Of a DNA stretch of 64,000 nucleotides, positions 2,903 to 15,944 are shown piece by piece; positions within the stretch are counted from its first letter, which is position 1; every line of letters starts with the position of its first letter. Location: NCBI GenBank assembly GCA_950097015.1, contig CATNEN010000012.1, positions 3,596,001 to 3,660,000 on the forward strand, written 5' to 3'. The notes under the pieces were generated by a model. That model saw only the letters and a list, made by a program, of their open reading frames with translations, was not told where the DNA came from and ran no database searches. Source of the DNA: Macrostomum hystrix (Eukaryota; Animalia; Platyhelminthes). The position numbers and the translations under genes were made by a program.

Positions 2903-4126
2903 TCAAACCGGGTAATAGTGCCTAATCCAGTTGAGGAGGGCACTGAAGCTATACTTGGGGTATAGACAGCACCATAGGAATTCTTTGAGGTGGCTTTCAA
3001 ATAGAGCAGCACTTGTGCCATGCATTTGGTGCAGCTTGGCCTTTGCATGGGCCCAGGTGCCCTCGATGGTATTCATATAGAGTGTCGGATCGGCCAGGTC
3101 CACAAAGTGGAGCCTGTGGTTGACAAATGCGTGGTTCTGCAAGCCAGCATATGCGAGCCACCCATCGGTCAAGATGCGGGTCCCTGGCAGGCTTACATGT
3201 GCAACACCCAGCCGACCCGGCCAAACCGGCCGGGTGAAACGAGGGCCAAGCAAGGTAAGTTGCAAAAACCAATCAACCAAACGCAAAAAAATCAAAGGGA
3301 GGACCAAGGGACAAAAAAGGAAGGCGTGAAGAAAAGGAAAAAGGGGAGAGATAAAGAGAGCAAATGAGAGAAAACTAAGTCGTAAATTTCTCAAAAGAGC
3401 AAAAACTAAGTTGCATGGCTGGCTAAGATTTGGTAGGTTGCGCATGTATGCTGGCAGGATGTGGCGCTGCAGAATGGGTGTCAATGTTGCAGCCGACCTG
3501 TCCTCGACGATGGCCATCATACAGTTACCAGTTCCTCGCTCGACCATTCCGAGCACCCAATGGCCTTCCCTCCAGGCTCCGCGGTGATATTTTTGATGCA
3601 TGAATTTTGACTTGTCGACCTCGACAATGATGCCTGGGCCACCAAGCTGGACGGGATGGTCAAGCAAATATTGTTGGCAAATGTCCCGAAGAAATTGCTG
3701 CCAGTCAACCGCAGTCTGGTGGGACAAGTGACAACCCTCTCGAATGGTGATTGATGGGTGTCCAATTGCCCAGTAATAGGCCAGCTCAACCAGCTGGGAC
3801 AGGGTGCAATGGGACCCTTCCCAGAACGACCCTTTCCACACCGACACTTGGGCATTGCAGTTGCGGCAGCCCTAGGCATACCCATCCATAAAGTGGTCAC
3901 CATCTTGACGCTGCACCTGCATCTCGATGTTGCAGCGACTGCAGTGCATTGTGTTGGCGAGCAGCCTGTACTTAACAAGCCAGCGCAGGGTTGCCTGGAC
4001 ATCTGCGGTCGCCGCACACATGTCCTGGATCTTAAAACTGTCCACAGTCAGGTTGAGCAGCTCTGCAGCATTCAGTATTCCATTTGGTGGCATAAATGCA
4101 GATGGGGCTGTAGGTCGTCCAGCCAT
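2903..4126 (-). pseudogene. Merlin/ISXO2-type DDE transposase pseudogene
   Basis: One frame from ATG 4126 (MAGRPT...): zinc motif CSRC...DGYA*GCRNC (TAG at 3872-3874 where the family usually has W); motifs VEVDKSKF, WVLGMVER, DRSAATL, ILTDGW, VNH, NTIEG; interrupted by a 267-bp insertion. Confidence 0.9.
3192..3450. mobile_element. 259-bp non-autonomous element (MITE; hAT- or P-like) nested in the Merlin ORF
   Basis: 8-bp TSD ctggcagg (3184-3191, 3451-3458); 14-bp TIRs cttacatgtgcaac / gttgcgcatgtatg (2 mismatches); removal restores HILP-GTRILTD. Confidence 0.88.
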
Positions 4127-6137
4127 ATAGTTATTTGAATTATTTGAATTATACTTATTTGAATGCAAGGTCTTGCAAAATCTTCAGCTACAGAATTCTG
4201 TGCTTCCTGTTCCCCCATATTTGCCAGATTTTGCCATAGACATAGATCATAGCCATAGACAAGTCAAGTCACTGCAAAGCCACGTTAGCATAACTTTTTC
4301 AAACTCAGAATGCATGTCAGCACAACTTTTTCAAACTCAGAATGCACATGTGGCACAAATTCAAACGAAAAATAATATAACAAACAGAAGTAGAACATTG
4401 CCTAAGTTTTATATATATATAGAAAAATTAGACTTTGGTGAAAATTAATAATAATAAAAACGCAATCTATTACACACATCAACATAATACTGTCATGAAA
4501 TGCTTTTGACTATAACCTATGGCAATGTTTATACTATATAGGCCTAATAATTTAGTAATTATAGTTTTTACTGATAATTAAATTACTAATAAGATACTGT
4601 TCCTTGGTAGCATATTTCTTACTTCACTTTTCACTAATTTTATGGCATGAGGTAACTGCCCTATTTGGGTTTAGCTGTTTAATTTTGTATACAAATTCTT
4701 CTGACCTAACAGTTTTAAAAGGCACATGTTTACAATGATGCAATTTAGTATGTGACTGCTGGCTTCTTTTTGAAAAAATCCTATACATTATAGCTGAAGG
4801 ACTGACTTAGACTTGTTGCTTTAGATAAAATTGTTGGGTTGGGCATAGGATTGCCAACTTTGCCAGAGTTGAAGGTGAAGCTCAAAGCCAGTTTTGGAGT
4901 GACAACATAATCAGCAGGGATGTAGTTGCAGTAGTTTTTGAAGGCCAAGCATGCAGACTTTGCCTTAGGCTACACTGAGGCTTCTTTTACATTGGAATGC
5001 TTGCCTCAAGCTGCTCTGCTTTGGCCTTCATAGAGGTGCACTGGCTACTGAATAAAAACAATAGAATCTAGTTTTGAAAAAAAACTTGTGATGCTGGCTA
5101 CAAAAAACTACACACATTACTGGCTGACTATAGCATCAATGTCCAGCTCCATAGACAGTTGTGATGGTGACTATCAAGAGTTATTCCCATGGTCTGTCTG
5201 CAAAGCCATTGTGGCAGAAAGTACTTCCCCAACTTTGATTGCTCCCTTGTACCAAAGTCAAAAGACTAAGGTTATTGCTCTGAACTAATTGGCATTACAT
5301 GGCTTCTATGCACTTTAAACAGACCTATTCCTTAGAATTCTTAAACTATTGAAAGCTCTCTGAATCTCAAAAATATTGCTGACATTCCATTCTTTAATCT
5401 GCATAGTATTGGCACCCTAGAAAGCACATTCAACTGTCAATCAGGTTTTCTCTAAGATTTTTTACTTTGTCAAGGTAGCAATGTTGCCTCATTGTGTCTT
5501 CACATCATTAGTGCTTTTAGCTTGAATAGGACACCACAACATATTATACCACTGTTATGAATTCGTTGTGGCACTTTTTGTAGCTGTATGGAATAAACAT
5601 TTATGTTATGAAAAAGGCACTAAAGAAATTAAAGCTGCACTGTAGTAGCTTACCTATTAAACTTCACAGGTTCAATGTTGTGAATGCTAGTGAGTGTGTG
5701 GTTCCTCTTCTAATATGACCTCAATTGCTATTACTATTAGCTCAATGGGTGTCTAAAATGGTTAGATGTGCTCATTTTAAAGTATTGTTATACTTAATAT
5801 TATAAAACTTGATCTCACCCCTAGAAATTAGAGAAATGTGCATTGACTTTGTCTGTCTCACACATACAACAATGTGATTCTAGATCCTTACTGATAATGA
5901 TACATAAGAGTCCCAATAAATAGATATAATTATATTTTGTTTTTATAAAGCTCAAAGTTTACAGTCAATCGATGTGAAATGAGTACTAATTATAGAATTT
6001 TTTAACTATTATACTCTGTATATTGTTATTAGGGTAATAAAGATTTGTATAACTGCCATTGAGTTATTTACTCACACTTTTTTTGATACAATGTACCAAA
6101 GTACATTAAAAAACTGAATAATACCTTTCAGAAACTA

Positions 6138-9100
6138 ATGGCACCATCATCAGCTTCTACTGAGCATATCAAGCTAATCCTTGCTAAATTAGAGGATGTA
6201 TTGAAAGCATACAACTTTGGTGAGTTATATAATTATCCTTTATTTCACTTAGCTAATGCCTGGATTAAAAGGTGAAAATGTGATTAAGAGTAACAAATTG
6301 ACTAAATGTAGTATTTAAAGCTGCTTTTGTTGAAAGAACAACAATTGTTGTTGATTGACCTGTCCACCTGGTTAACTTACTAATACTATTTGCTTCTCAA
6401 TTACTCTTAGATTGTCAGCAGCAGCAACAAAGACAGCAGCAGCTGGCCAGGGCAAGACTGTCGGCATCAACAACAAAACAACAACGAAGTAATGAATCAG
6501 TTGCTAAAGTGCAACAGCAACAGCAGCAGCATCGATCATCACCAACACGTACATTGGCTTCGTTTAGCTGTGAGGAAGCGGTCCAGACGCCTCAGCAGTC
6601 GACATCCGCTGCGCCAACAGGCAATAATAGCATTCTTGGCAGCGTCTTGGGCAGTCGGCGCAGGCGACGGCGCGGTCTCCTTGGCCGCCTGCTGAGGCAA
6701 TGCCTGCCTGCTGGCTTGGGGACAAAGGGCAGCGGCGACAGCAAGCCAAAGATACAGGTACAAATCATTTCACTAAAATATTTTCAGGACACGCCCTCTG
6801 TAGTGTCTGGGATTCGATACCAGGAGGTCCGATATCTCGTATTCGGGGCTTCTTTTTCTAGTATACTTGGCTTCTATATCTTGCATCCAAGGATTATATA
6901 TCTAGTATTCAAAGATTCGGTACCTAGAGAATTCGTTACCTAGAATTGGCACTTATCAAAGCCACCGCAGCAGTTCGCTAGGTATTCGATATCTAGTACC
7001 ATAGAATTCGTTACATAGTATTGGGGCATTCAGTACCTAGTACTATAGAATTCGTTGCCTAGTACCAGAAGGGTATTCAGTACCTAGTACCATAAGGGTA
7101 TTCAGTACCTAGTATCAGGGAATTCGATACCTAGTACCAGTGAATTCGTTACATAATATCAGGGAATTCGTTACCTAGTATCAGGGAATTCGTTACCTAG
7201 TATCAGGGAATTCGTTACCTAGTATCAGGGAATTCGTTACCTAGTATCAGGGAATTCGTTACCTAGTATCAGGGAATTCGTTACCTAGTATCAGGGAATT
7301 CGTTACCTAGTATCAGGGAATTCGTTACCTAGTATTAGGGAATTCGTTACCTAGTATCAGGGAATTCGTTACCTAGTATCAGGGAATTCGTTACCTAGTA
7401 TCAGGGAATTAGTTACCTAGTCTCGATATTTCTATTTTTGTAATTTATTTTCATCGCTCGCCCCTTCCCAGGTGCCTCTCGGCTGGGCCTCGGCCGTCAC
7501 TTTTAATTGGCGGCGTCAGACTTCAAATGTCAGCGGCGTTTCCGCAGATGTCGACAAAATCAATGACAACAGTGGCGGAGGCGGTCGGCTGCTGCACAAG
7601 CGCCTGAAGCGCTGTGGCTTAAGTAGCTTCGGTCATCACGAACCGGTTGTGCTAATCGGCCGTCGGGCTCGGCACAGCACCATTCTGATGGCGCGCGCCC
7701 GCCGACTAAGACGAAGTCTGCCGGCTAAACTGCGGCGCCAATTGGAGGGCCTAGGCAACGATCAGGCTGATGACGAGGAAGATGACGAAGAACAACAAGA
7801 CAAAGAACTGGAGGAGTTCAAGCAGCATTTTGCTAACAATGCTCAACATAGTCAGGACGACCTGCTGATGGCTCCCATCGCGCCAGTAGATTCCGTTGAC
7901 GTCATTGAAAGCTCCCTTGTAACTGACGAAGGCGCCGGTGTTGCCTCGTGCGCGGCCTCCGCTGCCGGCGTCGCATTCGCGCCAGACTCGGAGCAGTTGT
8001 CTGTGATTCTGGCCACACCGCAGCGTCGCGAGTTGGATGCCGAAGTGCGAAAAATTGAAGAAGAGATTAAAAATGTCCGGCAGCAGCTGGAGCAGCCGGA
8101 ATCCGAATCGCCGCTGATGCCAACGACGCCGCCGCCAAGGCGTCAGCTGCTTGTAACTAGCAGCGGCCTGGATCCCAGCGAAGTGGCCCAGTTAAGGCGG
8201 CTATGCGAGAATCACTCCGATTATTGCGCCTATCAGGCCAGGTTCCAGTTTGATCCGGCCTGTCACACTACTCACGTGGTCATCAGGGAGAGCGGTGCGG
8301 TCAGGGTTAGCGAGAGAACGCTAAAATACTTTCAGGTAATTTTACACTTGACATCTGCAGTGATGGTGGGGTGACAATCAATGCTCCCCGAAGTATCATT
8401 GGTACATTAGCAGTGCTCCCTGAAGTATCATTGGTACTAGCAGTGCTCCCTGAAGTATCATTGGTACTAGCAGTGCTCCCTGAAGTATCATTGGTAATAG
8501 CAGTACTCCCTGAAGTATCATTGGTACTAGCAGTACTCCCTGAAGTATCATTGGTACTAGCAGTACTCCCTGAAGTATCATTGGTACTAGCAGTACTCCC
8601 TGAAGTATCATTGGTAATAGCAGTACTCCCTGAAGTATCATTGGTACTAGCAGTACTCCCTGAAGTATCATTGGTACTAGCAGTACTCCCTGAAGTATCA
8701 TTGGTAATAGCAGTACTCCCTGAAGTATCATTGGTACTAGCAGTACTCCCTGAAGTATCATTGGTACTAGCAGTACTCCCTGAAGTATCATTGGTACTAG
8801 CAGTACTCCCTGAAGTATCATTGGTACTAGAAGTGCTCCCTGAAGTATCATTGATGCTAGCACTGGTCCCAGAAAGACCTTAGTTACTTGCAGTGGTCCC
8901 TAAGGAGTCAAGTTAAAAGCAGCAGTTCCTATAATATCTGACAGCTCTCGCTAAAAGTGCATAAAAAGCATTTCTACAAAAACATTTTTCCACTCAATCT
9001 TAAACGGGTTTCCCGCCCTTTCTCCCCCTCTCCGCAGGCGCTGGTGTCTGGCGCGTGGCTGCTGAGCTTCGACTGGGTGTCGGAGTCACTGGCCTCTGGC

Positions 9101-9592
9101 TCGCTGCAACCGGAGTCCAACTACGAGATCCAGGGCGACCTGTCGTGCGGCGTGAACCACATGGGGCCGGCCAGAAGCCGCCGAGGTCGCGCTCGCTGTC
9201 CCGGGCCGTCGCGTCTGTTGGAGCAGTTCAGCATCGCCCCAGTCGGCGAGTTCATCAACATGCCGACATTCGCACTGCAGACTCTGGTGCAGCAGTGCGG
9301 CGGTCAGTTCGTGGCAGAGCCGGAGCTGCTACCTCGGCGACAGCCCGCCGGCCGACTCAGCGTGGCCGTAGCCGATCAGGACGACGCCAGGTTCAGCGAG
9401 CCCCGCTGCCGCCACCTCGCGGCCTCCGGCGACATCGTCGTGCTGAACCGCGACTGGCTGCTGGACTCCATCAGCAAGTTCCGAGTGCAGCAGCTCGACA
9501 GCGCTGAGTACTGCATCGCTCCCGACTTCTCCGTTGTCATGCGGGTTCTGGCTCGCCAGAAAATCAGTTTGGCTGACCTTGCCGACTGTTAA
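6138..9592 (+). CDS. BRCA1: BRCA1-like protein, copy A (about 615 aa; tandem BRCT; no RING found)
   Basis: Exons 6138-6219, 6411-6757, 7472-8335, 9038-9592 with GT-AG sites and consistent phases (1,0,0). BRCT motifs VTSSGL, TTHVV, ERTLKYF, W..FDWV, YEIQGD..GVNHMGP, GEFINMP, NRDWLLDS match BRCA1. The first exon and start codon are less certain. Confidence 0.88.
7150..7420. repeat. 22-bp intronic minisatellite (gggaattcgttacctagtatca)
   Basis: About 12 near-perfect units; degenerate units extend left to about 6900. Confidence 0.95.
8381..8905. repeat. 30-bp intronic minisatellite (ttggtactagcagtactccctgaagtatca)
   Basis: About 16 units plus degenerate right edge, in the last intron of BRCA1-A. 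Confidence 0.95.
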
Positions 9593-9869
9593 CCCTGCTT
9601 GACAGGAATCTTGTTTCGTATTCCAGGGTTTTTCTGACATACTTAAAGTACATAGTTTCATATCATTGTGCCTTCCTGCACTGAAATTAAAAATTTAAGC
9701 CAAAATAATATCGCAATTGCTAAATTGACTTATTTTACGAGCGTACTAATCCTCTTCAGGCCTTCTCCCCCACCCGGAATTTCTTTGGTTAGGATTTTAA
9801 TAAACCTATGGGTCAGGAATCCTAATTAATTTAGAAATCCTCGCTGCTTTCTTAAATCCCTAGCTAAAA

Positions 9870-10395
9870 AATCCCACTGATTTGTAAAATCCCTAGATTA
9901 GAAATCCTCACTGATTTGTAAAATCCCTAGATTAGAAATCTTCACTGATTTGTAAAATCCCTAGACTAGAAATCCTCACTGATTTGTAAAATCCCTAGAT
10001 TAGAAATCTTCACTGATTTGTAAAATCCCTAGATTAGAAATCCTCACTGATTTGTAAAATCCCTAGATTAGAAATCCTCACTGATTTGTAAAATCCCTAG
10101 ATTAGAAATCTTCACTGATTTGTAAAATCCCTAGACTAGAAATCCTCACTGATTTGTAAAATCCCTAGATTAGAAATCCTCACTAATTTGTAAAATCCCT
10201 AGATTAGAAATCCTCACTGATTTGTAAACTGCCTAGGTTGGAAATTCCTACTGATTTGTAAAATCCATAGATTAGAAATCCTCACTGATTTGTAAAATCC
10301 CTAGATTAGAAATCCTCACTGATTTGTAAACTGCCTAGGTTGGAAATTCCTACTGATTTGTAAAATTCATTGATTAGAAATCCTCACTGATTCGT
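9870..10395. repeat. 34-bp minisatellite (ctgatttgtaaaatccctagattagaaatcctca)
   Basis: Period 34 (9911 to 9945); about 15 units. Confidence 0.95.
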
Positions 10396-11044
10396 CAACT
10401 CAAGAGATTTAGATATCCTCTTCGATCTCCCGAATCCCACGGTTTAAAATATTGAATCGTTTAAAAGTGTAATTTCACTGTTTGTTTTTTTGCGCCTAAG
10501 CCGCAGCCCTATTTGTCATTTCTGTTTACGTTTATGCTTTTTTCTCTACATTTTCTTGATAGAAGGCTTTCTATTTGTATTGGGGAATCGATTTGCACCT
10601 TTTACCTATCTTTGCTTACTTTTATACCAAGAAGGTCAATTTCTTAAGGCACCCAATATCCTTCAATCCTGGCATTTCATATGTTAGGGGTTATTGTAAC
10701 TGTTCATTAAAAAAACCCCACTTCCTATTTTATAATTCCTGCATTTTTAAACTAGTTTCTGCTTCCACAACGGCATGTACCGCAATGCAATAAGCATCTA
10801 GTTTAATTGCTTTTACTTTATTCACATTTTCTATTTTAAACTACTTTCGTTCTGGCTAGCTCCTAATTTTGCTAAATAATCTATTTTCTACTGTTTAATA
10901 TGCCTGTTAAATATTTATTTAGTGCCTAATGCGCGGAGTCTTATGTGCACGAGTAAAACGTTTTATCGCTCGGGACCTTGTTTATTAAAGCACTTTTCTG
11001 TTTCGAGATTTTTTTATTTAAATAGAAACTTAAGTCACCCCTGT

Positions 11045-11895
11045 AGTACTGAAGCCACACCCCTAGGGCTGAAGCCACACCTGATTATCTGAATCCACAC
11101 CTGTACTGTTGAAGCCACACCTTGGGGACTGTAGGAATACCATTAGGACTGAAGTCAAACTTTCAAGACTGTAGGACTAAAGCCACACCTTCATGACTGT
11201 AGGACTAAAGCCACACCTTCATGACTGTAGGACTGAAGCCAAACCTTCAAGACTGTAGGACTAAAGCCACACCTTCATGACTGTAGGACTAAAGCCACAC
11301 CTTCATGACTGTAGGACTGAAGTCAAACCTTCAAGACTGTAGGACTAAAGCCACACCTTCATGACTGTAGGACTAAAGCTACACCTTCATGACTGTAGGA
11401 CTAAAGCCACACCTTCATGACTGTAGGACTAAAGCCACACCTTCATGACTGTAGGACTGAAGCCAAACCTTCAAGACTGTAGGACTAAAGCCACACCTTC
11501 ATGACTGTAGGACTAAAGCCAAACCTTCAAGACTGTAGGACTGAAGCCAAACCTTCAAGACTGTAGGACTGAAGCCACACCTTCATTACTGTAGGACTAA
11601 AGCTACACCTTCATGACTGTAGGACTAAAGCTACACCTTCATGACTGTAGGACTGAAGCCAAACCTTCAAGACTGTAGGACTAAAGCCACACCTTCATGA
11701 CTGTAGGACTAAAGCCACACCTTCATGACTGTAGGACTAAAGCCACACCTTCATGACTGTAGGACTAAAGCCACACCTTCATGACTGTAGGACTAAAGCC
11801 ACACCTTCATGACTGTAGGACTAAAGCCACACCTTCAGGACTGTGGCTGCATCTGAAGATCTGAAGCTACACCCCTGGGGCACAAGCCACACCTC
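11045..11895. repeat. 28-bp minisatellite (gactgtaggactaaagccacaccttcat)
   Basis: About 25 regular units with degenerate edges. Confidence 0.95.
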
Positions 11896-12110
11896 TTAGG
11901 CTTAGGCCTTGTACTTTTCAACATTTCGTCGCAATCAACGCAAGAATAAATTACGATATTGGGAAGCTTAACCATAGACAGCTGGAGCATTCCGTCTTGT
12001 TTAGGCTAGATTAAAATATTTGTCATGCGGTCTGTTGTTAATCCACAGGTTTAAAAAATGCACGCAGCACAAACTGCAACACTGTCCGTAAAACAAAACC
12101 CGCAGTTGCC

Positions 12111-15100
12111 ATGAGCGATCGACGCGAGAAGCTCGGCAAAATCATCTCACTCATTGAGGACGTTATTGGCACTTACGATAATAGTGAGTCGTTTTTGGTC
12201 ACTGCGCGCATTTTTGTGTTTTGCAGTCCGCGGGGATTAGGCAAACAGCTTAGCTAAGTAAACTGCTTTGAATTAAACAGTGTGATTGTAAAATTAAAAC
12301 GGCAATAAAACCGCACATTTCAGCTATCTCGGTAGGCATGGGCGCAGGGCAGACCAAGTCTACTGCAGCGGCAGGCGACGGTGCCATCGCCGACAACCGT
12401 AGACCCCAGGCATCTACTAAAGCCATCGCCGATGACAATGCGGAAAATGTTGAAGTCGGTTTGAGTGTACCCGGCGCTATAAACAGCGGATCACGTTCGC
12501 CGCTCGAGCCCTTCAACAAGACATTCTCTAATAGGAAGGCCCACAATCAGCAGCAGGCTGTCAAATCGGAAGATTCGGTCCCGCCTACACCGCCAAAGCG
12601 AGCAAAACCTTCTGGGCCTTCTACAACTAGGCGCAGTCATCCCACCGCGTCGACCAAGTCGAAGCGTGAACAGGGCGAACGCGAGATGGCAAAGTTTTTG
12701 CGCGAAATGGCGGAAGTGGAGCGCTTTGTACTTGTAATTGAGGAGCAAGGCAGGAAATCGACAGAAGGACTAACTGGCACCGGGGAGAGAGAGGCGGCGG
12801 CTGCGGTCTCGACGAGTAGGAGACACAGTGCTCCAGAGGCTCATATGTGAGTTTAGTTTTATAATGCAGCGATTAGCTTACAATTGCACCGTTTTCAATT
12901 TAGTATGTTGGACTAGCAACTTTGCCCCCAATATTTGTTCATTTGGATAAGTTAAAATACTACATACCTGGCAACTATAACTTACTTTCTGCAACTCTGA
13001 AGTGTCCAGGGAGGCAAAATATAAAAAAATGGACCTATGAAATTTAAAGTTCACAGTGCTCCTAGGTAAAATGCTTTAAAGCATTCTCAAATCCGTCACG
13101 TGACTATTAAGGTCTTCAGACTGATAAAAAAATGACAATAATAACTGCAAGAGGGCTGTGGGCAACGGCACATTTGGTGACACTAGACCCGCAGCCAGCG
13201 AGGAGGCAATTCTGCGCATTTCGCTGACTCCTGTGCGCACACGCACACGGATATCGTACGCCGGCCCACGCTCACACAGGTGTGTACATCTGCCCAGACG
13301 TTCTCATCGTCCTGTAGGTTGGCCCTAAAGGGCGTAAATTGCACGACAAGCCCTCCAAGCCTTCTCTTCGCGGCTGCGCCCCAAATGAATGTGGCCTCGC
13401 CGTGGAATCGAGCTCAGGGACCTTGGTGCGAAAGGCAAACGCGTTAGACCGCTCTGCCACTCACCCCTTCATCGATAGTATAGATTCTAGATAGAAATTA
13501 CTTATAGCTCTTTTGTGTTCAGCCAGTGGCACAGCCGCAGCCATTGTGCGGCGCTTCCAAAGGCTGTGTACATGCTGGGCTACAAGCTCCCCATCATCTT
13601 CAACCTTCAGTTGACCTTTAGGCGAATTCCCTATCGAGATTTCATCACATATTTTTACTTTTAATTCAGAATGAAGCCAACAGAAGCGGCAGACGACACA
13701 ATGGCGTCGACAGTTAAGAAGGCCGCAGGTGACAATCACTGCCAACCATCAGCAGCCGAAGAGTCGACCAAGCCCAAGGCGGAGAAGGCGGTAACCTTCG
13801 CCACGGCCGGCAGCGGCCGCAAGCGCCACCTTGTTCTAGCGGACAATCCACGAGCAGATTTCAATGTCGACCTCGACATTGACGTCACCGACGATGAAGA
13901 TAACAACATAGAAGATCAGGAAAGCGAGGCGGAGGATAACCCGGCGTCCACCTCCATGTCTGGCGTCGGCTGCGCGCCACTGCGCGGCGGCTGGAAGGCC
14001 ACCGTCAAACGATTGAAACGGCCGTTTGCTCGTCTGAGCCGATTTCGTCAGACAGCCGCCACAATTGAAGATCCCGACGACCCCGTGGCGGACTCTGGAC
14101 CAGTGGTGCTGACTTCGCGAAGGCCGAGGCGCAGCACGGCCATTTTTCGTCTGTCTCGTAAGCCACAAAAGGCTCCACAGCCAATTGCCAAGGTGAGCGA
14201 ATCGGTAGTCATGTTTTAACCAGGAAATTCACTCACCGTGCTCAGATCAGAATCTCAAAAGGTCTCTAGGGAATCTCATCCTACTTAAGAGAGAATCTCA
14301 CCCTACTCTCTAAGGAATCTCATCTCACTTTATAGAGAATCTCACCCCACTATCTAAGGAATCTCATCCTACTTTAAAGAGAATCTCACCCCACTCTCTA
14401 AGGAATCTCGTGCTACTTTAGAGAGAATCTCACCCCACTCTCTAAGGAATCTCATCCTACTTTAGAGAGAATCTCACCCCACTCTCTAAGGAATCTCGTG
14501 CTACTTTAGAGAGAATCTCACCCCACTCTCTAAGGAATCTCATCCTACTTTCGAGAGAATCTCATCCTACTTTAGAGAGAATCTCACCCCACTCTCTAGG
14601 GAATCTCTCTTACTCTATTTCAGCCGCAGCCTGAAGTCCAGCAGTCACAAAAGCGTCGCCGTCAGCCAAAGCCTCCCGCTAGCGAAGAGGCCCCAGCACC
14701 CGACGGCGACATTGACTCCGTGCTGGCCGGCCTGCCAGAGTTCGCTACAGATTCGTTTCGTGTCCTCACAGGCCGCATGCTGCCGCCGCCGCCGCCCCAA
14801 CCGCTGCCGCAGCCCTCGGAGTCCTTCGAATCATTGGCGGCTGTGCCTGAGCAACAGCCGGCACTGCCGCAGCCGCCAATGCCGCAGTCAATCCAGGTGA
14901 CTAGCAGCGGCCTGGATCCCAACCAGATTGCTCAACTGAGGCAACTGTGCGAATTGCACTCGGACAAGTGCGCCTATCAGGCCAGGTTCCAGTTTAATCC
15001 GGACTGTCACACTACTCACGTGGTCATTAGAGAGTCCTCGGTGGCCAGGGTTGGCGAGAGGACGTTAAAGTACTTCCAGGTATGGAATTTTTTAATCATT

Positions 15101-15804
15101 TCGCTAACTAGCAGTGGATCCTAAGGAATCAAGTTAAAAGCAGCAGTTCCTATAATATCTGACAGCTCTCGCTAAAAGTGCATAAAAAGCATTTCTACAA
15201 AAACATTTTTCCACTCAATCTTAAACGGGTTTCCCGCCCTTTCTCCCCCTCTCCGCAGGCGCTGGTGTCTGGCGCGTGGCTGCTGAGCTTCGACTGGGTG
15301 TCGGAGTCGCTGGCCTCTGGCTCGCTGCAACCGGAGTCCAACTACGAGATCCAGGGCGACCTGTCGTGCGGCGTGAACCACATGGGGCCGGCCAGAAGCC
15401 GCCGAGGTCGCGCTCGCTGTCCCGGGCCGTCGCGTCTGTTGGAGCAGTTCAGCATCGCCCCAGTCGGCGAGTTCATCAACATGCCGACATTCGCACTGCA
15501 GACTCTGGTGCAGCAGTGCGGCGGTCAGTTCGTGGCAGAGCCGGAGCTGCTACCTCGGCGACAGCCCGCCGGCCGACTCAGCGTGGCCGTAGCCGATCAG
15601 GACGACGCCAGGTTCAGCGAGCCCCGCTGCCGCCACCTCGCGGCCTCCGGCGACATCGTCGTGCTGAACCGCGACTGGCTGCTGGACTCCATCAGCAAGT
15701 TCCGAGTGCAGCAGCTCGACAGCGCTGAGTACTGCATCGCTCCCGACTGCTCCGTTGTAGAGCGACTAGTCCTGGCTCAGCTGGGCTCGCTTTCGGCAGA
15801 CTAA
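12111..15804 (+). CDS. BRCA1: BRCA1-like protein, copy B (about 706 aa; tandem BRCT; no RING found)
   Basis: Exons 12111-12183, 12324-12846, 13670-14192, 14624-15079, 15259-15804; GT-AG sites, phases 1,2,0,0 give one 2121-nt frame; same BRCT motifs as copy A. Confidence 0.88.
13140..13467 (-). mobile_element. tRNA-derived SINE in BRCA1-B intron 2
   Basis: Minus-strand head GGGGTGAG-TGGCAGAGCGG (A box, 13449-13459) and GAGCTCGATTCC (B-box-like, 13404-13415), followed by a GC-rich body; no full cloverleaf. 3' end approximate; no TSD seen. Confidence 0.65.
14255..14610. repeat. 44-bp dimeric (22+22) intronic minisatellite
   Basis: gagagaatctcaccccactctc alternating with taaggaatctcatcctacttta. 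Confidence 0.93.
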
Positions 15805-15944
15805 ATTCACTGACGATTCTGTGCGAATTGATTTTTGCGAGTAATTTATTTTCTGAGCTGCTTTTTATTTGCCTGTTATTATATGTATGCTGTAGTGTTT
15901 AATATTGAAAGCACTGGATTGGCTTCAGTGGGGTAGACAATTCG

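What the first reader, a model, noticed from the sequence alone, without database searches (positions are those of the whole stretch)
6138..15804. Tandem pair of apparently RING-less BRCA1 genes
Seen: both copies keep the residues matching the BRCA1 phosphopeptide pocket (SG, ERTLK, NMP, RDW), yet I find no C3HC4 RING exon. For copy B the 2.5 kb upstream is two minisatellites plus short non-coding sequence. Both start with a homologous phase-1 exon (EHIKLILAKLEDVLKAYNF versus EKLGKIISLIEDVIGTYDN), each just after an AG acceptor (6131, 12048). Established: canonical BRCA1 has an N-terminal RING that pairs with BARD1; flatworms use SL trans-splicing. Inference: this helix may be the remnant post-RING helix, and these may be natural ligase-less BRCT adaptors, possibly trans-spliced.
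Basis: partly seen in the sequence, partly recalled or inferred. Interest (0 to 1): 0.75.

Follow-up and report, generated by a model that had tools for sequence, protein, structure and literature searches.

The report
Flatworm BRCA1 gene pair without RING
Two neighbouring, expressed flatworm genes descend from the DNA-repair gene BRCA1 but have lost its ubiquitin-ligase (RING) end at an old exon border, so a tractable animal may show what BRCA1 does without that domain.

Summary
Window 6132-9592 (gene A, 615 aa) and about 12106-15804 (gene B, 706 aa) are intact GT-AG genes of a Macrostomum flatworm (M. hystrix according to earlier scan notes).

- **BRCA1 type.** Both end in a tandem BRCT of BRCA1 type with the phosphopeptide pocket residues kept. 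PDB E-value is 5e-18 for BRCA1, against 0.04-0.2 for MCPH1 and BARD1. Their nearest relatives are the BRCA1 proteins of parasitic flatworms, which keep the RING.
- **No RING.** None is encoded in 64 kb here, in the syntenic M. lignano locus, or beside a more distant relative.
- **Exon 1.** Its helix matches the BRCA1 post-RING helix (hhalign P 4e-5; 0 of 200 shuffles). That helix is a single 89-nt exon with a phase-1 donor in a mammal, a cestode and a trematode. Exon 1 here is 88 nt with a phase-1 donor, so the genes were cut at an ancestral exon border.
- **Transcripts.** Spliced RNA contigs confirm all three introns of A. They carry 22 non-genomic letters at acceptor 6131, which fits a spliced leader, but the letters were not shown.
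- **Other features.** A keeps the PALB2-type coiled coil. Both copies are under purifying selection.

Still untested: B's 5' end (no RNA supports acceptor 12048), BARD1, and a RING-bearing copy elsewhere in the genome. The scan had already noted the conversion tract on this same stretch, but not the RING loss.

The parts
6130..6131 (+). AG acceptor of gene A exon 1; in RNA it is joined to 22 letters that do not match the genome upstream
   Evidence: 1349-nt contigs in three runs begin their match at 6131 and carry 22 further letters, although 6108-6130 was offered.
6132..6219 (+). Gene A exon 1 (88 nt; ATG at 6138; phase-1 donor). Encodes the helix homologous to the BRCA1 post-RING helix.
6411..6757 (+). 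Gene A exon 2, low-complexity Gln/Ser/Arg-rich
   Evidence: joints 6219|6411 and 6757|7472.
7472..8335 (+). Gene A exon 3: basic and acidic linker, coiled coil, first half of BRCT1
8000..8095 (+). Gene A coiled coil matching the PALB2-binding coiled coil of canonical BRCA1
   Evidence: hhalign probability 96%, E 4e-9.
8141..8335 (+). Gene A BRCT1 N-terminal half with the SG and RTLKYF pocket residues
9038..9592 (+). Gene A last exon: rest of BRCT1, BRCT2 (NMP, RDWLLDS), stop codon
12047..12048 (+).
   Evidence: depth 0 on 11908-12107 in four runs..
12104..12105 (+). Alternative AG acceptor for B, 5 nt before the ATG, in the motif CCCGCAG|TTG shared with M. lignano
12111..12183 (+). Gene B first coding exon (helix; phase-1 donor)
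12324..12846 (+). Gene B exon 2; holds a weak candidate coiled coil at about 12667-12750
   Evidence: P 0.026 only.
13670..14192 (+). Gene B exon 3
14624..15079 (+). Gene B exon 4: Pro-rich linker and BRCT1 N-terminal half
15259..15804 (+). Gene B last exon: rest of BRCT1, BRCT2, stop codon
8890..9539 (+). Gene-conversion tract (copy in A), about 650 nt including 148 nt of intron. Partner in B at about 15110-15760, with 2-3 differences.
   Evidence: The same pattern is seen between the two M. lignano copies.
9831..11844 (.). Spacer between A and B: 34-mer and 28-mer minisatellites flanking about 640 nt of unique, transcribed, unspliced sequence. No RING-like ORF.

Best explanation
A and B are the two co-orthologues of BRCA1 in Macrostomum flatworms. 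Both have lost the N-terminal helix and the C3HC4 RING.

**How the RING was lost.** The loss is exon-precise. Their first exon is the old internal exon that encodes the helix just behind the RING. In a mammal, a cestode and a trematode this exon is 89 nt with a phase-1 donor. The exon has gained a start codon. Its acceptor no longer receives RING exons. In RNA it receives a short non-genomic leader, most probably the Macrostomum spliced leader.

**What the proteins are.**
- A: post-RING helix, low-complexity linker, PALB2-type coiled coil, tandem BRCT.
- B: post-RING helix, longer linker with at most a degenerate coiled coil, tandem BRCT.

**Inferred function.** They act as non-catalytic scaffolds in homologous recombination. 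The BRCT pair would bind pSer-x-x-Phe partners of the CtIP, BRIP1 or Abraxas kind. A's coiled coil would recruit PALB2-BRCA2-RAD51. There would be no RING-based E3 activity and no canonical four-helix RING pairing with BARD1.

**Age and maintenance.** The pair arose before M. hystrix and M. lignano split. Both copies are under purifying selection, and their last exon is kept alike by gene conversion.

**Shown:** gene structure, splicing of A, BRCA1-type BRCT, absence of a RING locally, helix and exon homology, coiled coil in A, synteny, selection.
**Inferred:** identity of the leader, lack of ligase activity, binding partners.
For: - **Gene models and RNA.** Open frames with GT-AG introns. Spliced contigs in three runs confirm A's three introns and carry a 22-nt non-genomic 5' end at acceptor 6131. 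All three assemblies stop at the same length. The match starts at 6131, so the letter before the exon is G and the one before it is not A, as expected for a leader ending in ATG.
- **BRCT identity.** PDB phmmer gives BRCA1 5e-18, MCPH1 0.04 and BARD1 0.17. Of the 150 best hits among 1.8 billion proteins, 79 carry a RING at about residue 22-24, and those named are BRCA1. An AF2 model of the M. lignano A BRCTs (pLDDT 87.6) matches BRCA1 BRCT with target TM about 0.9, against about 0.75 for BARD1. In the BRCT tree the nearest relatives are L001 and then the RING-bearing neodermatan BRCA1s.
- **Pocket residues** are kept in both copies.
- **No RING.** Regex and profile searches on six-frame pieces of the window, L001 and L002 find none. 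The neodermatan BRCA1s keep it.
- **Helix.** hhalign of the exon-1 profile against BRCA1 N-termini scores 23.6, against shuffles 8.0 +/- 1.7 (0 of 300). Against flatworm N-termini it gives P 3.9e-5 and score 26.6, against 8.3 +/- 1.8 (0 of 200). The match lies right after the last CPxC.
- **Exon structure.** The helix exon is 89 nt in Rhynchocyon, Echinococcus and Calicophoron. It is 88 nt in M. hystrix A and L001 and 93 nt in M. lignano A. All have phase-1 donors.
- **Start codon.** The acceptor-to-ATG distance is 6 nt in M. hystrix and 8 nt in M. lignano, so that stretch is untranslated.
- **Coiled coil.** Probability 96%, E 4e-9.
- **Synteny.** The same A-then-B order is found in M. lignano.
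- **Selection.** dN/dS is 0.14-0.23 between species and 0.31 between A and B.
- **Spliced leader background.** In M. hystrix 10-20% of genes are trans-spliced and the leader ends in AUG (PMC10468722).
Against: - The 22 leader letters were not printed, so identity with the spliced leader is unproven. An extension of 22-23 nt is also shorter than the 30 nt a k=31 assembly could keep.
- B's 5' end has no direct RNA evidence. B's expression is only inferred from the share of words held by the runs.
- The whole genome could not be searched. A separate RING-bearing BRCA1, a RING-only fission product, or BARD1 may exist.
- The helix match rests on about 25 residues of an amphipathic helix. The reversed control scores 13, so part of the score is helical periodicity.
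- The borders of Macrostomum exon 1 lie 4-5 codons off those of the 89-nt exon in the best alignment. Only L001 fits within one codon.
- Function is entirely inferred.
Confidence: 0.75

Rival explanations
1. The RING is still there. One or more RING-coding exons lie further upstream than the sequence examined (more than 6 kb for A) and are cis-spliced onto acceptor 6131. The 22 extra letters are the end of that exon.
For: One search shows that something is spliced onto 6131, but its letters were not shown. There is no in-frame stop between the acceptor and the ATG in A.
Against: - Three independent assemblies at depth about 13 all stop 22 nt upstream. That is unexpected for a unique coding exon.
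- The acceptor-to-ATG spacing differs by 2 nt between the M. hystrix and M. lignano orthologues, so the frame is not kept upstream of the ATG.
- All five genes compared have an ATG at the start of the first coding exon, within 3-8 nt of the acceptor in M. hystrix A, M. lignano A and L001.
- No RING lies in 6.1, 3.8 and 6.1 kb upstream in three genomes.
- For B, the space back to gene A holds only minisatellites and short unique sequence.
Confidence: 0.07
2. A and B are real RING-less genes but are accessory paralogues. A canonical RING-bearing BRCA1 (with BARD1) exists elsewhere in Macrostomum genomes and carries the ligase function, so the lineage has not given up the RING.
For: The genome could not be searched. 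Word-based protein searches saw only proteins of 209-1141 aa. Only 30 of the 150 exhaustive hits were named. Gene duplication often precedes domain loss in one copy.
Against: - In the exhaustive search the only hits above 41% identity are the M. lignano A and B proteins.
- The rows nearest to the Macrostomum clade in the BRCT tree are L001, neodermatan flatworms, an annelid and echinoderms. None is from Macrostomum.
- A and B sit where the species tree would put the flatworm BRCA1 orthologue, and both copies lack the RING.
- 3968 earlier scan notes on this genome mention no other BRCA1 and no BARD1. This is weak evidence, because the notes do not cover the whole genome.
Confidence: 0.15
3. The resemblance of exon 1 to the post-RING helix is convergence between amphipathic helices. 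The N-terminus is a new exon unrelated to the RING domain.
For: The match covers only about 25 residues. Single HMM hits have E 0.2-10. The reversed profile still scores 13.
Against: - The score is about 9 standard deviations above shuffles and twice the reversed control, against two independent profiles.
- The best hits fall at the same place, just after the RING, in long canonical proteins.
- In the M. lignano locus, the two best of all six-frame pieces (15 aa or longer) against the BRCA1 N-terminal profile are exactly the two first exons.
- Exon size and donor phase match the conserved 89-nt exon.
Confidence: 0.1

Closest known systems
Canonical BRCA1 (RING-type E3 ubiquitin transferase BRCA1), including the neodermatan flatworm BRCA1 proteins of Schistosoma, Echinococcus, Opisthorchis and Calicophoron
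   Same: C-terminal tandem BRCT with the pSer-x-x-Phe pocket; PALB2-type coiled coil (gene A); post-RING helix encoded by one exon of about 89 nt with a phase-1 donor; position in the BRCT tree next to flatworm BRCA1.
   Different: No N-terminal helix and no C3HC4 RING, so no RING E3 module and no canonical four-helix bundle with BARD1. Much shorter (615 and 706 aa against about 900-2800 aa). Duplicated in tandem, with a gene-converted last exon.
RING-less BRCA1 made in human tumours and mouse models (for example from 185delAG-type alleles by downstream translation start)
   Same: A protein that starts after the RING and keeps the coiled coil and BRCTs. In those systems it is a partly functional hypomorph (papers listed, such as PMC5403137 and PMC8647010; titles and abstracts only were read).
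   Different: Here the truncation is natural and fixed. It is older than the split of two species and is maintained by purifying selection. It arises at the level of gene structure, not from a mutant allele.
BARD1
   Same: Tandem BRCT protein of the same superfamily, and the partner of BRCA1.
   Different: BARD1 has its own RING and ankyrin repeats, and none is found here. The BRCTs match BARD1 far less well than BRCA1: E 0.17 against 5e-18, and TM 0.75 against 0.9.
Spliced-leader trans-spliced genes of Macrostomum (10-30% of genes; leader ends in AUG)
   Same: The first exon starts at an AG acceptor a few nt before the ATG, and RNA carries a short non-genomic 5' extension ending in G.
   Different: The leader sequence itself was not read here. 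What is unusual is that the acceptor appears to be an ancestral internal cis-splice acceptor.

Membership tests
BRCA1 orthologue group | C-terminal tandem BRCT closer to BRCA1 than to any other BRCT family | tested here: met
BRCA1 orthologue group | Phosphopeptide pocket residues (human S1655/G1656, R1699/T1700/K1702, N1774/M1775, R1835/W1837; numbering from memory) | tested here: met
   The SG, RTLKYF, NMP and RDWLLDS columns are kept in A and B.
BRCA1 orthologue group | Coiled coil upstream of the BRCTs (PALB2-binding region) | tested here: met
   Gene A: hhalign probability 96%, E 4e-9. Gene B is inconclusive: P 0.026, with a 3-residue insertion.
BRCA1 orthologue group | Helix following the RING, on its own 89-nt exon with a phase-1 donor | tested here: met
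   Exon length is 88-93 nt. Borders fit within one codon in L001 and are shifted 4-5 codons in Macrostomum.
BRCA1 as RING-type E3 ubiquitin transferase | N-terminal C3HC4 RING with the preceding helix | tested here: not met
   Absent from both models, from the 64-kb window, and from the M. lignano locus and L001. These genes are therefore BRCA1 by descent, but not members of the ligase class.
BRCA1 as RING-type E3 ubiquitin transferase | Heterodimer with BARD1 and H2A ubiquitylation | not testable with these tools
SL trans-spliced mRNA | The mature 5' end is the spliced leader joined at an AG acceptor | tested here: inconclusive
   Gene A: 22 non-genomic letters at acceptor 6131, with G as the last letter, but the letters were not shown. 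Gene B: no contig on 11908-12107.
BARD1 | RING plus ankyrin repeats plus BARD1-type BRCTs | tested here: not met
   Pfam finds only BRCT. The PDB sequence and fold searches favour BRCA1.
Tandem paralogues under concerted evolution | A near-identical tract within each species that differs between species | tested here: met
   Within M. hystrix there are 3 differences in 501 nt. The M. lignano A and B last exons are likewise nearly identical to each other but only 81-85% identical to M. hystrix.

The most novel reading that the evidence does not exclude
Macrostomorphan flatworms have no RING-bearing BRCA1 at all. They run BRCA1-dependent recombination with two ligase-less proteins. The domain was removed in one step, when spliced-leader trans-splicing captured the acceptor of the internal post-RING-helix exon. 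The retained helices of A and B might pair with each other (or with what is left of BARD1) in place of the BRCA1-BARD1 RING bundle.
Probability: 0.4. Interest if true: 0.8.

Novelty: new variant of a known kind. Interest (0 to 1): 0.68.

Why it matters
The BRCA1-BARD1 RING heterodimer is treated as the conserved core of BRCA1 from plants to mammals. Whether its ligase and RING module is needed for recombination and genome stability has been argued for years, using engineered or tumour-derived RING-less proteins.

This would be a natural lineage that dropped the RING and kept the post-RING helix, the PALB2 coiled coil and an intact BRCT pocket, in two selectively maintained copies. That is an evolutionary separation-of-function experiment. 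It occurs in a flatworm genus whose model species, M. lignano, is studied for regeneration and stem-cell function (PMC10468722).

The exon-precise cut also suggests a general route to domain loss in trans-splicing organisms. An internal acceptor that begins to take the spliced leader makes every upstream exon dispensable at once.

Tried and rejected
- **Reading the 5' leader.** The one read-laying run listed only the best-supported loose ends, and the 22 letters at 6131 were not among them. The Logan product of that contig is not in the protein collection, so the contig could not be fetched.
- **Both 5' ends in one call.** I placed the 6000-letter stretch at 6108-12107 to catch both. Nothing lay on B's first 59 nt, so B's start stayed open.
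- **Joined models.** The joined spliced models were built only inside a script, to check frame and stops. They were not sent to any search or folding tool. Searches used single exons by reference or the database orthologues P0001, P0002 and P0152.
- **Short exon queries.** BRCT1 half-exons alone against PDB were too short to be significant (A: E 0.21; B: no BRCA1 hit).
- **Pfam on first exons** gave nothing useful.
- **Rfam on the whole window:** no hit.
- **The look-up of encoding contigs** found no record for P0001 or P0149.
- **Supplements.** None are held for the M. lignano trans-splicing paper. The M. hystrix genome paper's supplements do not mention BRCA1.
- **Exon 1 as the helix in front of the RING.** I considered and rejected this. 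The profile alignment puts it behind the RING in both tests.
- **B as a BARD1 stand-in by descent.** Rejected, because its BRCTs are BRCA1-type and gene-converted with A.
Full report
**What is there.**
The region is minisatellite-rich eukaryotic DNA. Earlier scan notes name the genome Macrostomum hystrix. Consistent with a Macrostomum origin, the closest database proteins are from M. lignano at 57-88% identity.

Two + strand genes can be built with canonical GT-AG introns and no internal stops:
- A: 6138-6219, 6411-6757, 7472-8335, 9038-9592 (615 aa).
- B: 12111-12183, 12324-12846, 13670-14192, 14624-15079, 15259-15804 (706 aa).

I joined exons only inside that script, to check frame. All searches used single exons by reference or database orthologues.

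**RNA evidence.**
Three runs of one study hold about half of the sampled words of 6000-15900. Their contigs are spliced, so they are RNA. A 1349-nt contig in each run covers 6131-6218, 6410-6754 and 7469-8332, then 30 nt of the last exon. The joints fall at the three predicted introns.

The contig stops 30 nt (k-1) into the last exon because A and B share that exon.

At its 5' end the contig carries 22 letters that do not match genomic 6108-6130. The acceptor at 6131 is therefore used and joined to something else. The match starts at 6131 rather than 6132 or 6130. So the letter before the exon is G and the one before that is not A, as expected for a leader ending in ATG. By chance this would happen about one time in five. 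The letters themselves were not listed.

B's expression is only inferred. The contigs laid on 6108-12107 account for about 0.26 of the words. The remaining 0.24 is about what B's exons would add. No contig lay on 11908-12107, although partial matches of about 35 nt were reported elsewhere in the same table. So B's mRNA probably does not contain 12049-12107. The AG at 12104-12105 lies in a CCCGCAG|TTG motif conserved in M. lignano and is the better candidate acceptor. B's 5' end stays open.

**BRCA1 identity.**
- A's last exon hits BRCA1 BRCT structures at E 5e-18. The next families are MCPH1 at 0.04 and BARD1 at 0.17.
- An exhaustive HMMER search with the BRCTs of the M. lignano orthologue gave 900 hits. 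Of the best 150, 79 carry a C3HC4 RING at residues 22-24 or so. Those whose names I looked up are BRCA1 of vertebrates, molluscs, a nemertean, echinoderms, an annelid and parasitic flatworms.
- An AlphaFold model of the M. lignano BRCTs (pLDDT 87.6) matches only BRCA1 BRCT among the top 30 PDB chains (target TM about 0.9, rmsd 2.2-2.5). BARD1 gives TM about 0.75.
- In a FastTree of the BRCT regions, the Macrostomum sequences group with L001 and then with neodermatan BRCA1. These are long branches, so the order is indicative only.
- In a fragment alignment, both A and B keep SG, RTLKYF, NMP and RDWLLDS in the canonical columns.

**The RING is absent.**
- Neither model has a Cys/His cluster.
- No RING pattern occurs in any frame of the window.
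- A profile of the first 115 residues of 79 canonical BRCA1s finds nothing (best E 0.66, in a wrong frame) among 3020 six-frame pieces of the window and L001.

M. lignano holds the same tandem pair in the same order (locus L002, NIVC01001010.1). It has no RING in the 3.8 kb upstream of A's first exon. The two best pieces against the BRCA1 N-terminal profile there are exactly the two first exons.

A more distant relative (L001, an unnamed ENA contig; BRCTs 41% identical) has the same first exon and no RING within 6 kb upstream.

BRCA1 of Spirometra, Echinococcus, Hymenolepis, Schistosoma japonicum, Opisthorchis, Paragonimus and Calicophoron, and by the RING pattern Dicrocoelium, keeps the RING. 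The loss is therefore not flatworm-wide.

The distance from acceptor to ATG is 6 nt in M. hystrix A and 8 nt in M. lignano A. A coding exon spliced on upstream could not be in frame in both, so that stretch is untranslated and the ATG is the start.

**What exon 1 is.**
- A profile of five first exons aligns to residues 71-95 of the BRCA1 N-terminal profile. The score is 23.6, against column shuffles of 8.0 +/- 1.7 (maximum 15.6; 0 of 300). The reversed control scores 13.2.
- Against flatworm N-termini it gives P 3.9e-5 and score 26.6, against shuffles of 8.3 +/- 1.8 (0 of 200). The match begins right after the last CPxC of the RING.
- An HMM of the exon finds its best place at residues 72-94 in most canonical proteins.
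- I mapped the gene structure of three RING-bearing genes. The helix is one exon of exactly 89 nt, with a phase-2 acceptor and a phase-1 donor. This holds in an elephant shrew (L005 24089-24177), Echinococcus (L004 762-850) and Calicophoron (L003 1270-1358). From memory, this is legacy exon 6 of human BRCA1.
- From AG to the phase-1 GT, the first exon is 88 nt in M. hystrix A, 88 nt in L001 and 93 nt in M. lignano A.
- In the best alignment L001's borders fit within one codon. The Macrostomum borders are shifted by 4-5 codons with the phase kept.

The simplest reading is that the RING exons were dropped and the ancestral internal acceptor became the 5' end of the mature mRNA. M. hystrix trans-splices 10-20% of its genes with a leader ending in AUG (PMC10468722). 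A spliced leader is therefore the most likely partner of acceptor 6131.

**Other features.**
- A's exon 3 holds a coiled coil that aligns with the canonical BRCA1 coiled coil (probability 96%, E 4e-9). B's candidate is weak (P 0.026).
- dN/dS between A and B in the unconverted BRCT1 half is 0.31, with dS about 1.
- dN/dS between species is 0.14-0.23 in all exons tested of both genes.
- The last exon plus 148 nt of intron is nearly identical between A and B. The two M. lignano copies are likewise alike but differ from M. hystrix. This is concerted evolution, already noted by the scan on this stretch.

**Mechanism proposed.**
Shown: these are BRCA1 by descent, they lack a RING, both are under purifying selection, and A is shown transcribed (B only inferred).

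Inferred from established BRCA1 biology:
- The BRCT pair reads pSer-x-x-Phe partners.
- A's coiled coil links to PALB2-BRCA2-RAD51.
- No RING-based ligase or canonical BARD1 bundle is possible.
- The kept helix may be a residual pairing surface or the nuclear export signal known in that helix of human BRCA1 (from memory, untested).

**Limits.**
- The leader letters were not read.
- B's start is unresolved.
- BARD1 and the rest of the genome were not searched.
- The organism of L001 is unknown.
- Short RING-less 'BRCA1 homolog' models also exist in RefSeq for an oyster, an abalone and a nemertean. They may be partial models, or a sign that such forms are more widespread.
- I found no paper describing a natural RING-less BRCA1 orthologue. 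The library is incomplete, so this is not proof of novelty.
- L005 is a non-human mammal locus. It was used only to map four exon borders.

Noticed in passing
window 8890-9539 and 15110-15760: About 650 nt, including 148 nt of intron, are nearly identical between otherwise diverged A and B (dS about 1 elsewhere). The two M. lignano copies show the same pattern, so there is ongoing gene conversion in both species. Between species, dS in this exon (0.45-0.50) is also lower than in the other exons (1.0-1.5).
   Followed up: partly
window 10301-10940: Unspliced RNA contigs lie in the unique stretch between the two intergenic minisatellites, at the same depth as gene A. This may be a long 3' UTR or read-through towards B, which would fit an A-B operon resolved by trans-splicing. 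AATAAA at 9799 suggests the main poly(A) site is earlier.
   Followed up: no
window 2903-3847 (- strand): A 314-aa ORF with an ISXO2/IS1595-type DDE transposase domain (Pfam E 3e-11), interrupted by a low-complexity stretch. Probably a decayed DNA transposon upstream of gene A.
   Followed up: no
window 6984-7421, 8384-8862, 14263-14607: Three introns of the two genes (two in A, one in B) hold a minisatellite (22-, 30- and 44-nt units). The 30-mer array reads as ORFs of 155-170 aa on both strands. These are artefacts. An annotated 290-aa M. lignano 'gene' at L002 6769-7641 lies inside the A orthologue's last intron and may be the same kind of artefact.
   Followed up: no
L001 6126-6213 and 9458-11167 (ENA ERZ25070786 contig ctg115010l): A contig of an unidentified organism carries a RING-less BRCA1-like gene with the same 88-nt first exon (AG, 3 nt, ATG, phase-1 donor). 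The coiled coil and both BRCTs lie in one long exon. This hints that the loss is older than the genus Macrostomum.
   Followed up: partly
proteins P0009, P0018, P0153: RefSeq 'BRCA1 homolog' models of Saccostrea (430 aa), Tubulanus (368 aa) and Haliotis (445 aa) have BRCTs but no RING. They may be partial models or real short forms. I did not examine this.
   Followed up: no
window 12058-12114: If B's exon started at 12049, its leader would hold an upstream ATG (12058) opening a 18-codon ORF that ends overlapping the main ATG. In gene A, a leader ending in ATG would be in frame with the main ATG (ATG AAA CTA ATG). In M. lignano A it would not be.
   Followed up: no
window 9088: The RNA contigs of the shared last exon read G where copy A has A and copy B has G. 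The assembled shared-exon contig therefore follows B's allele at this site, a small hint that B is transcribed.
   Followed up: no
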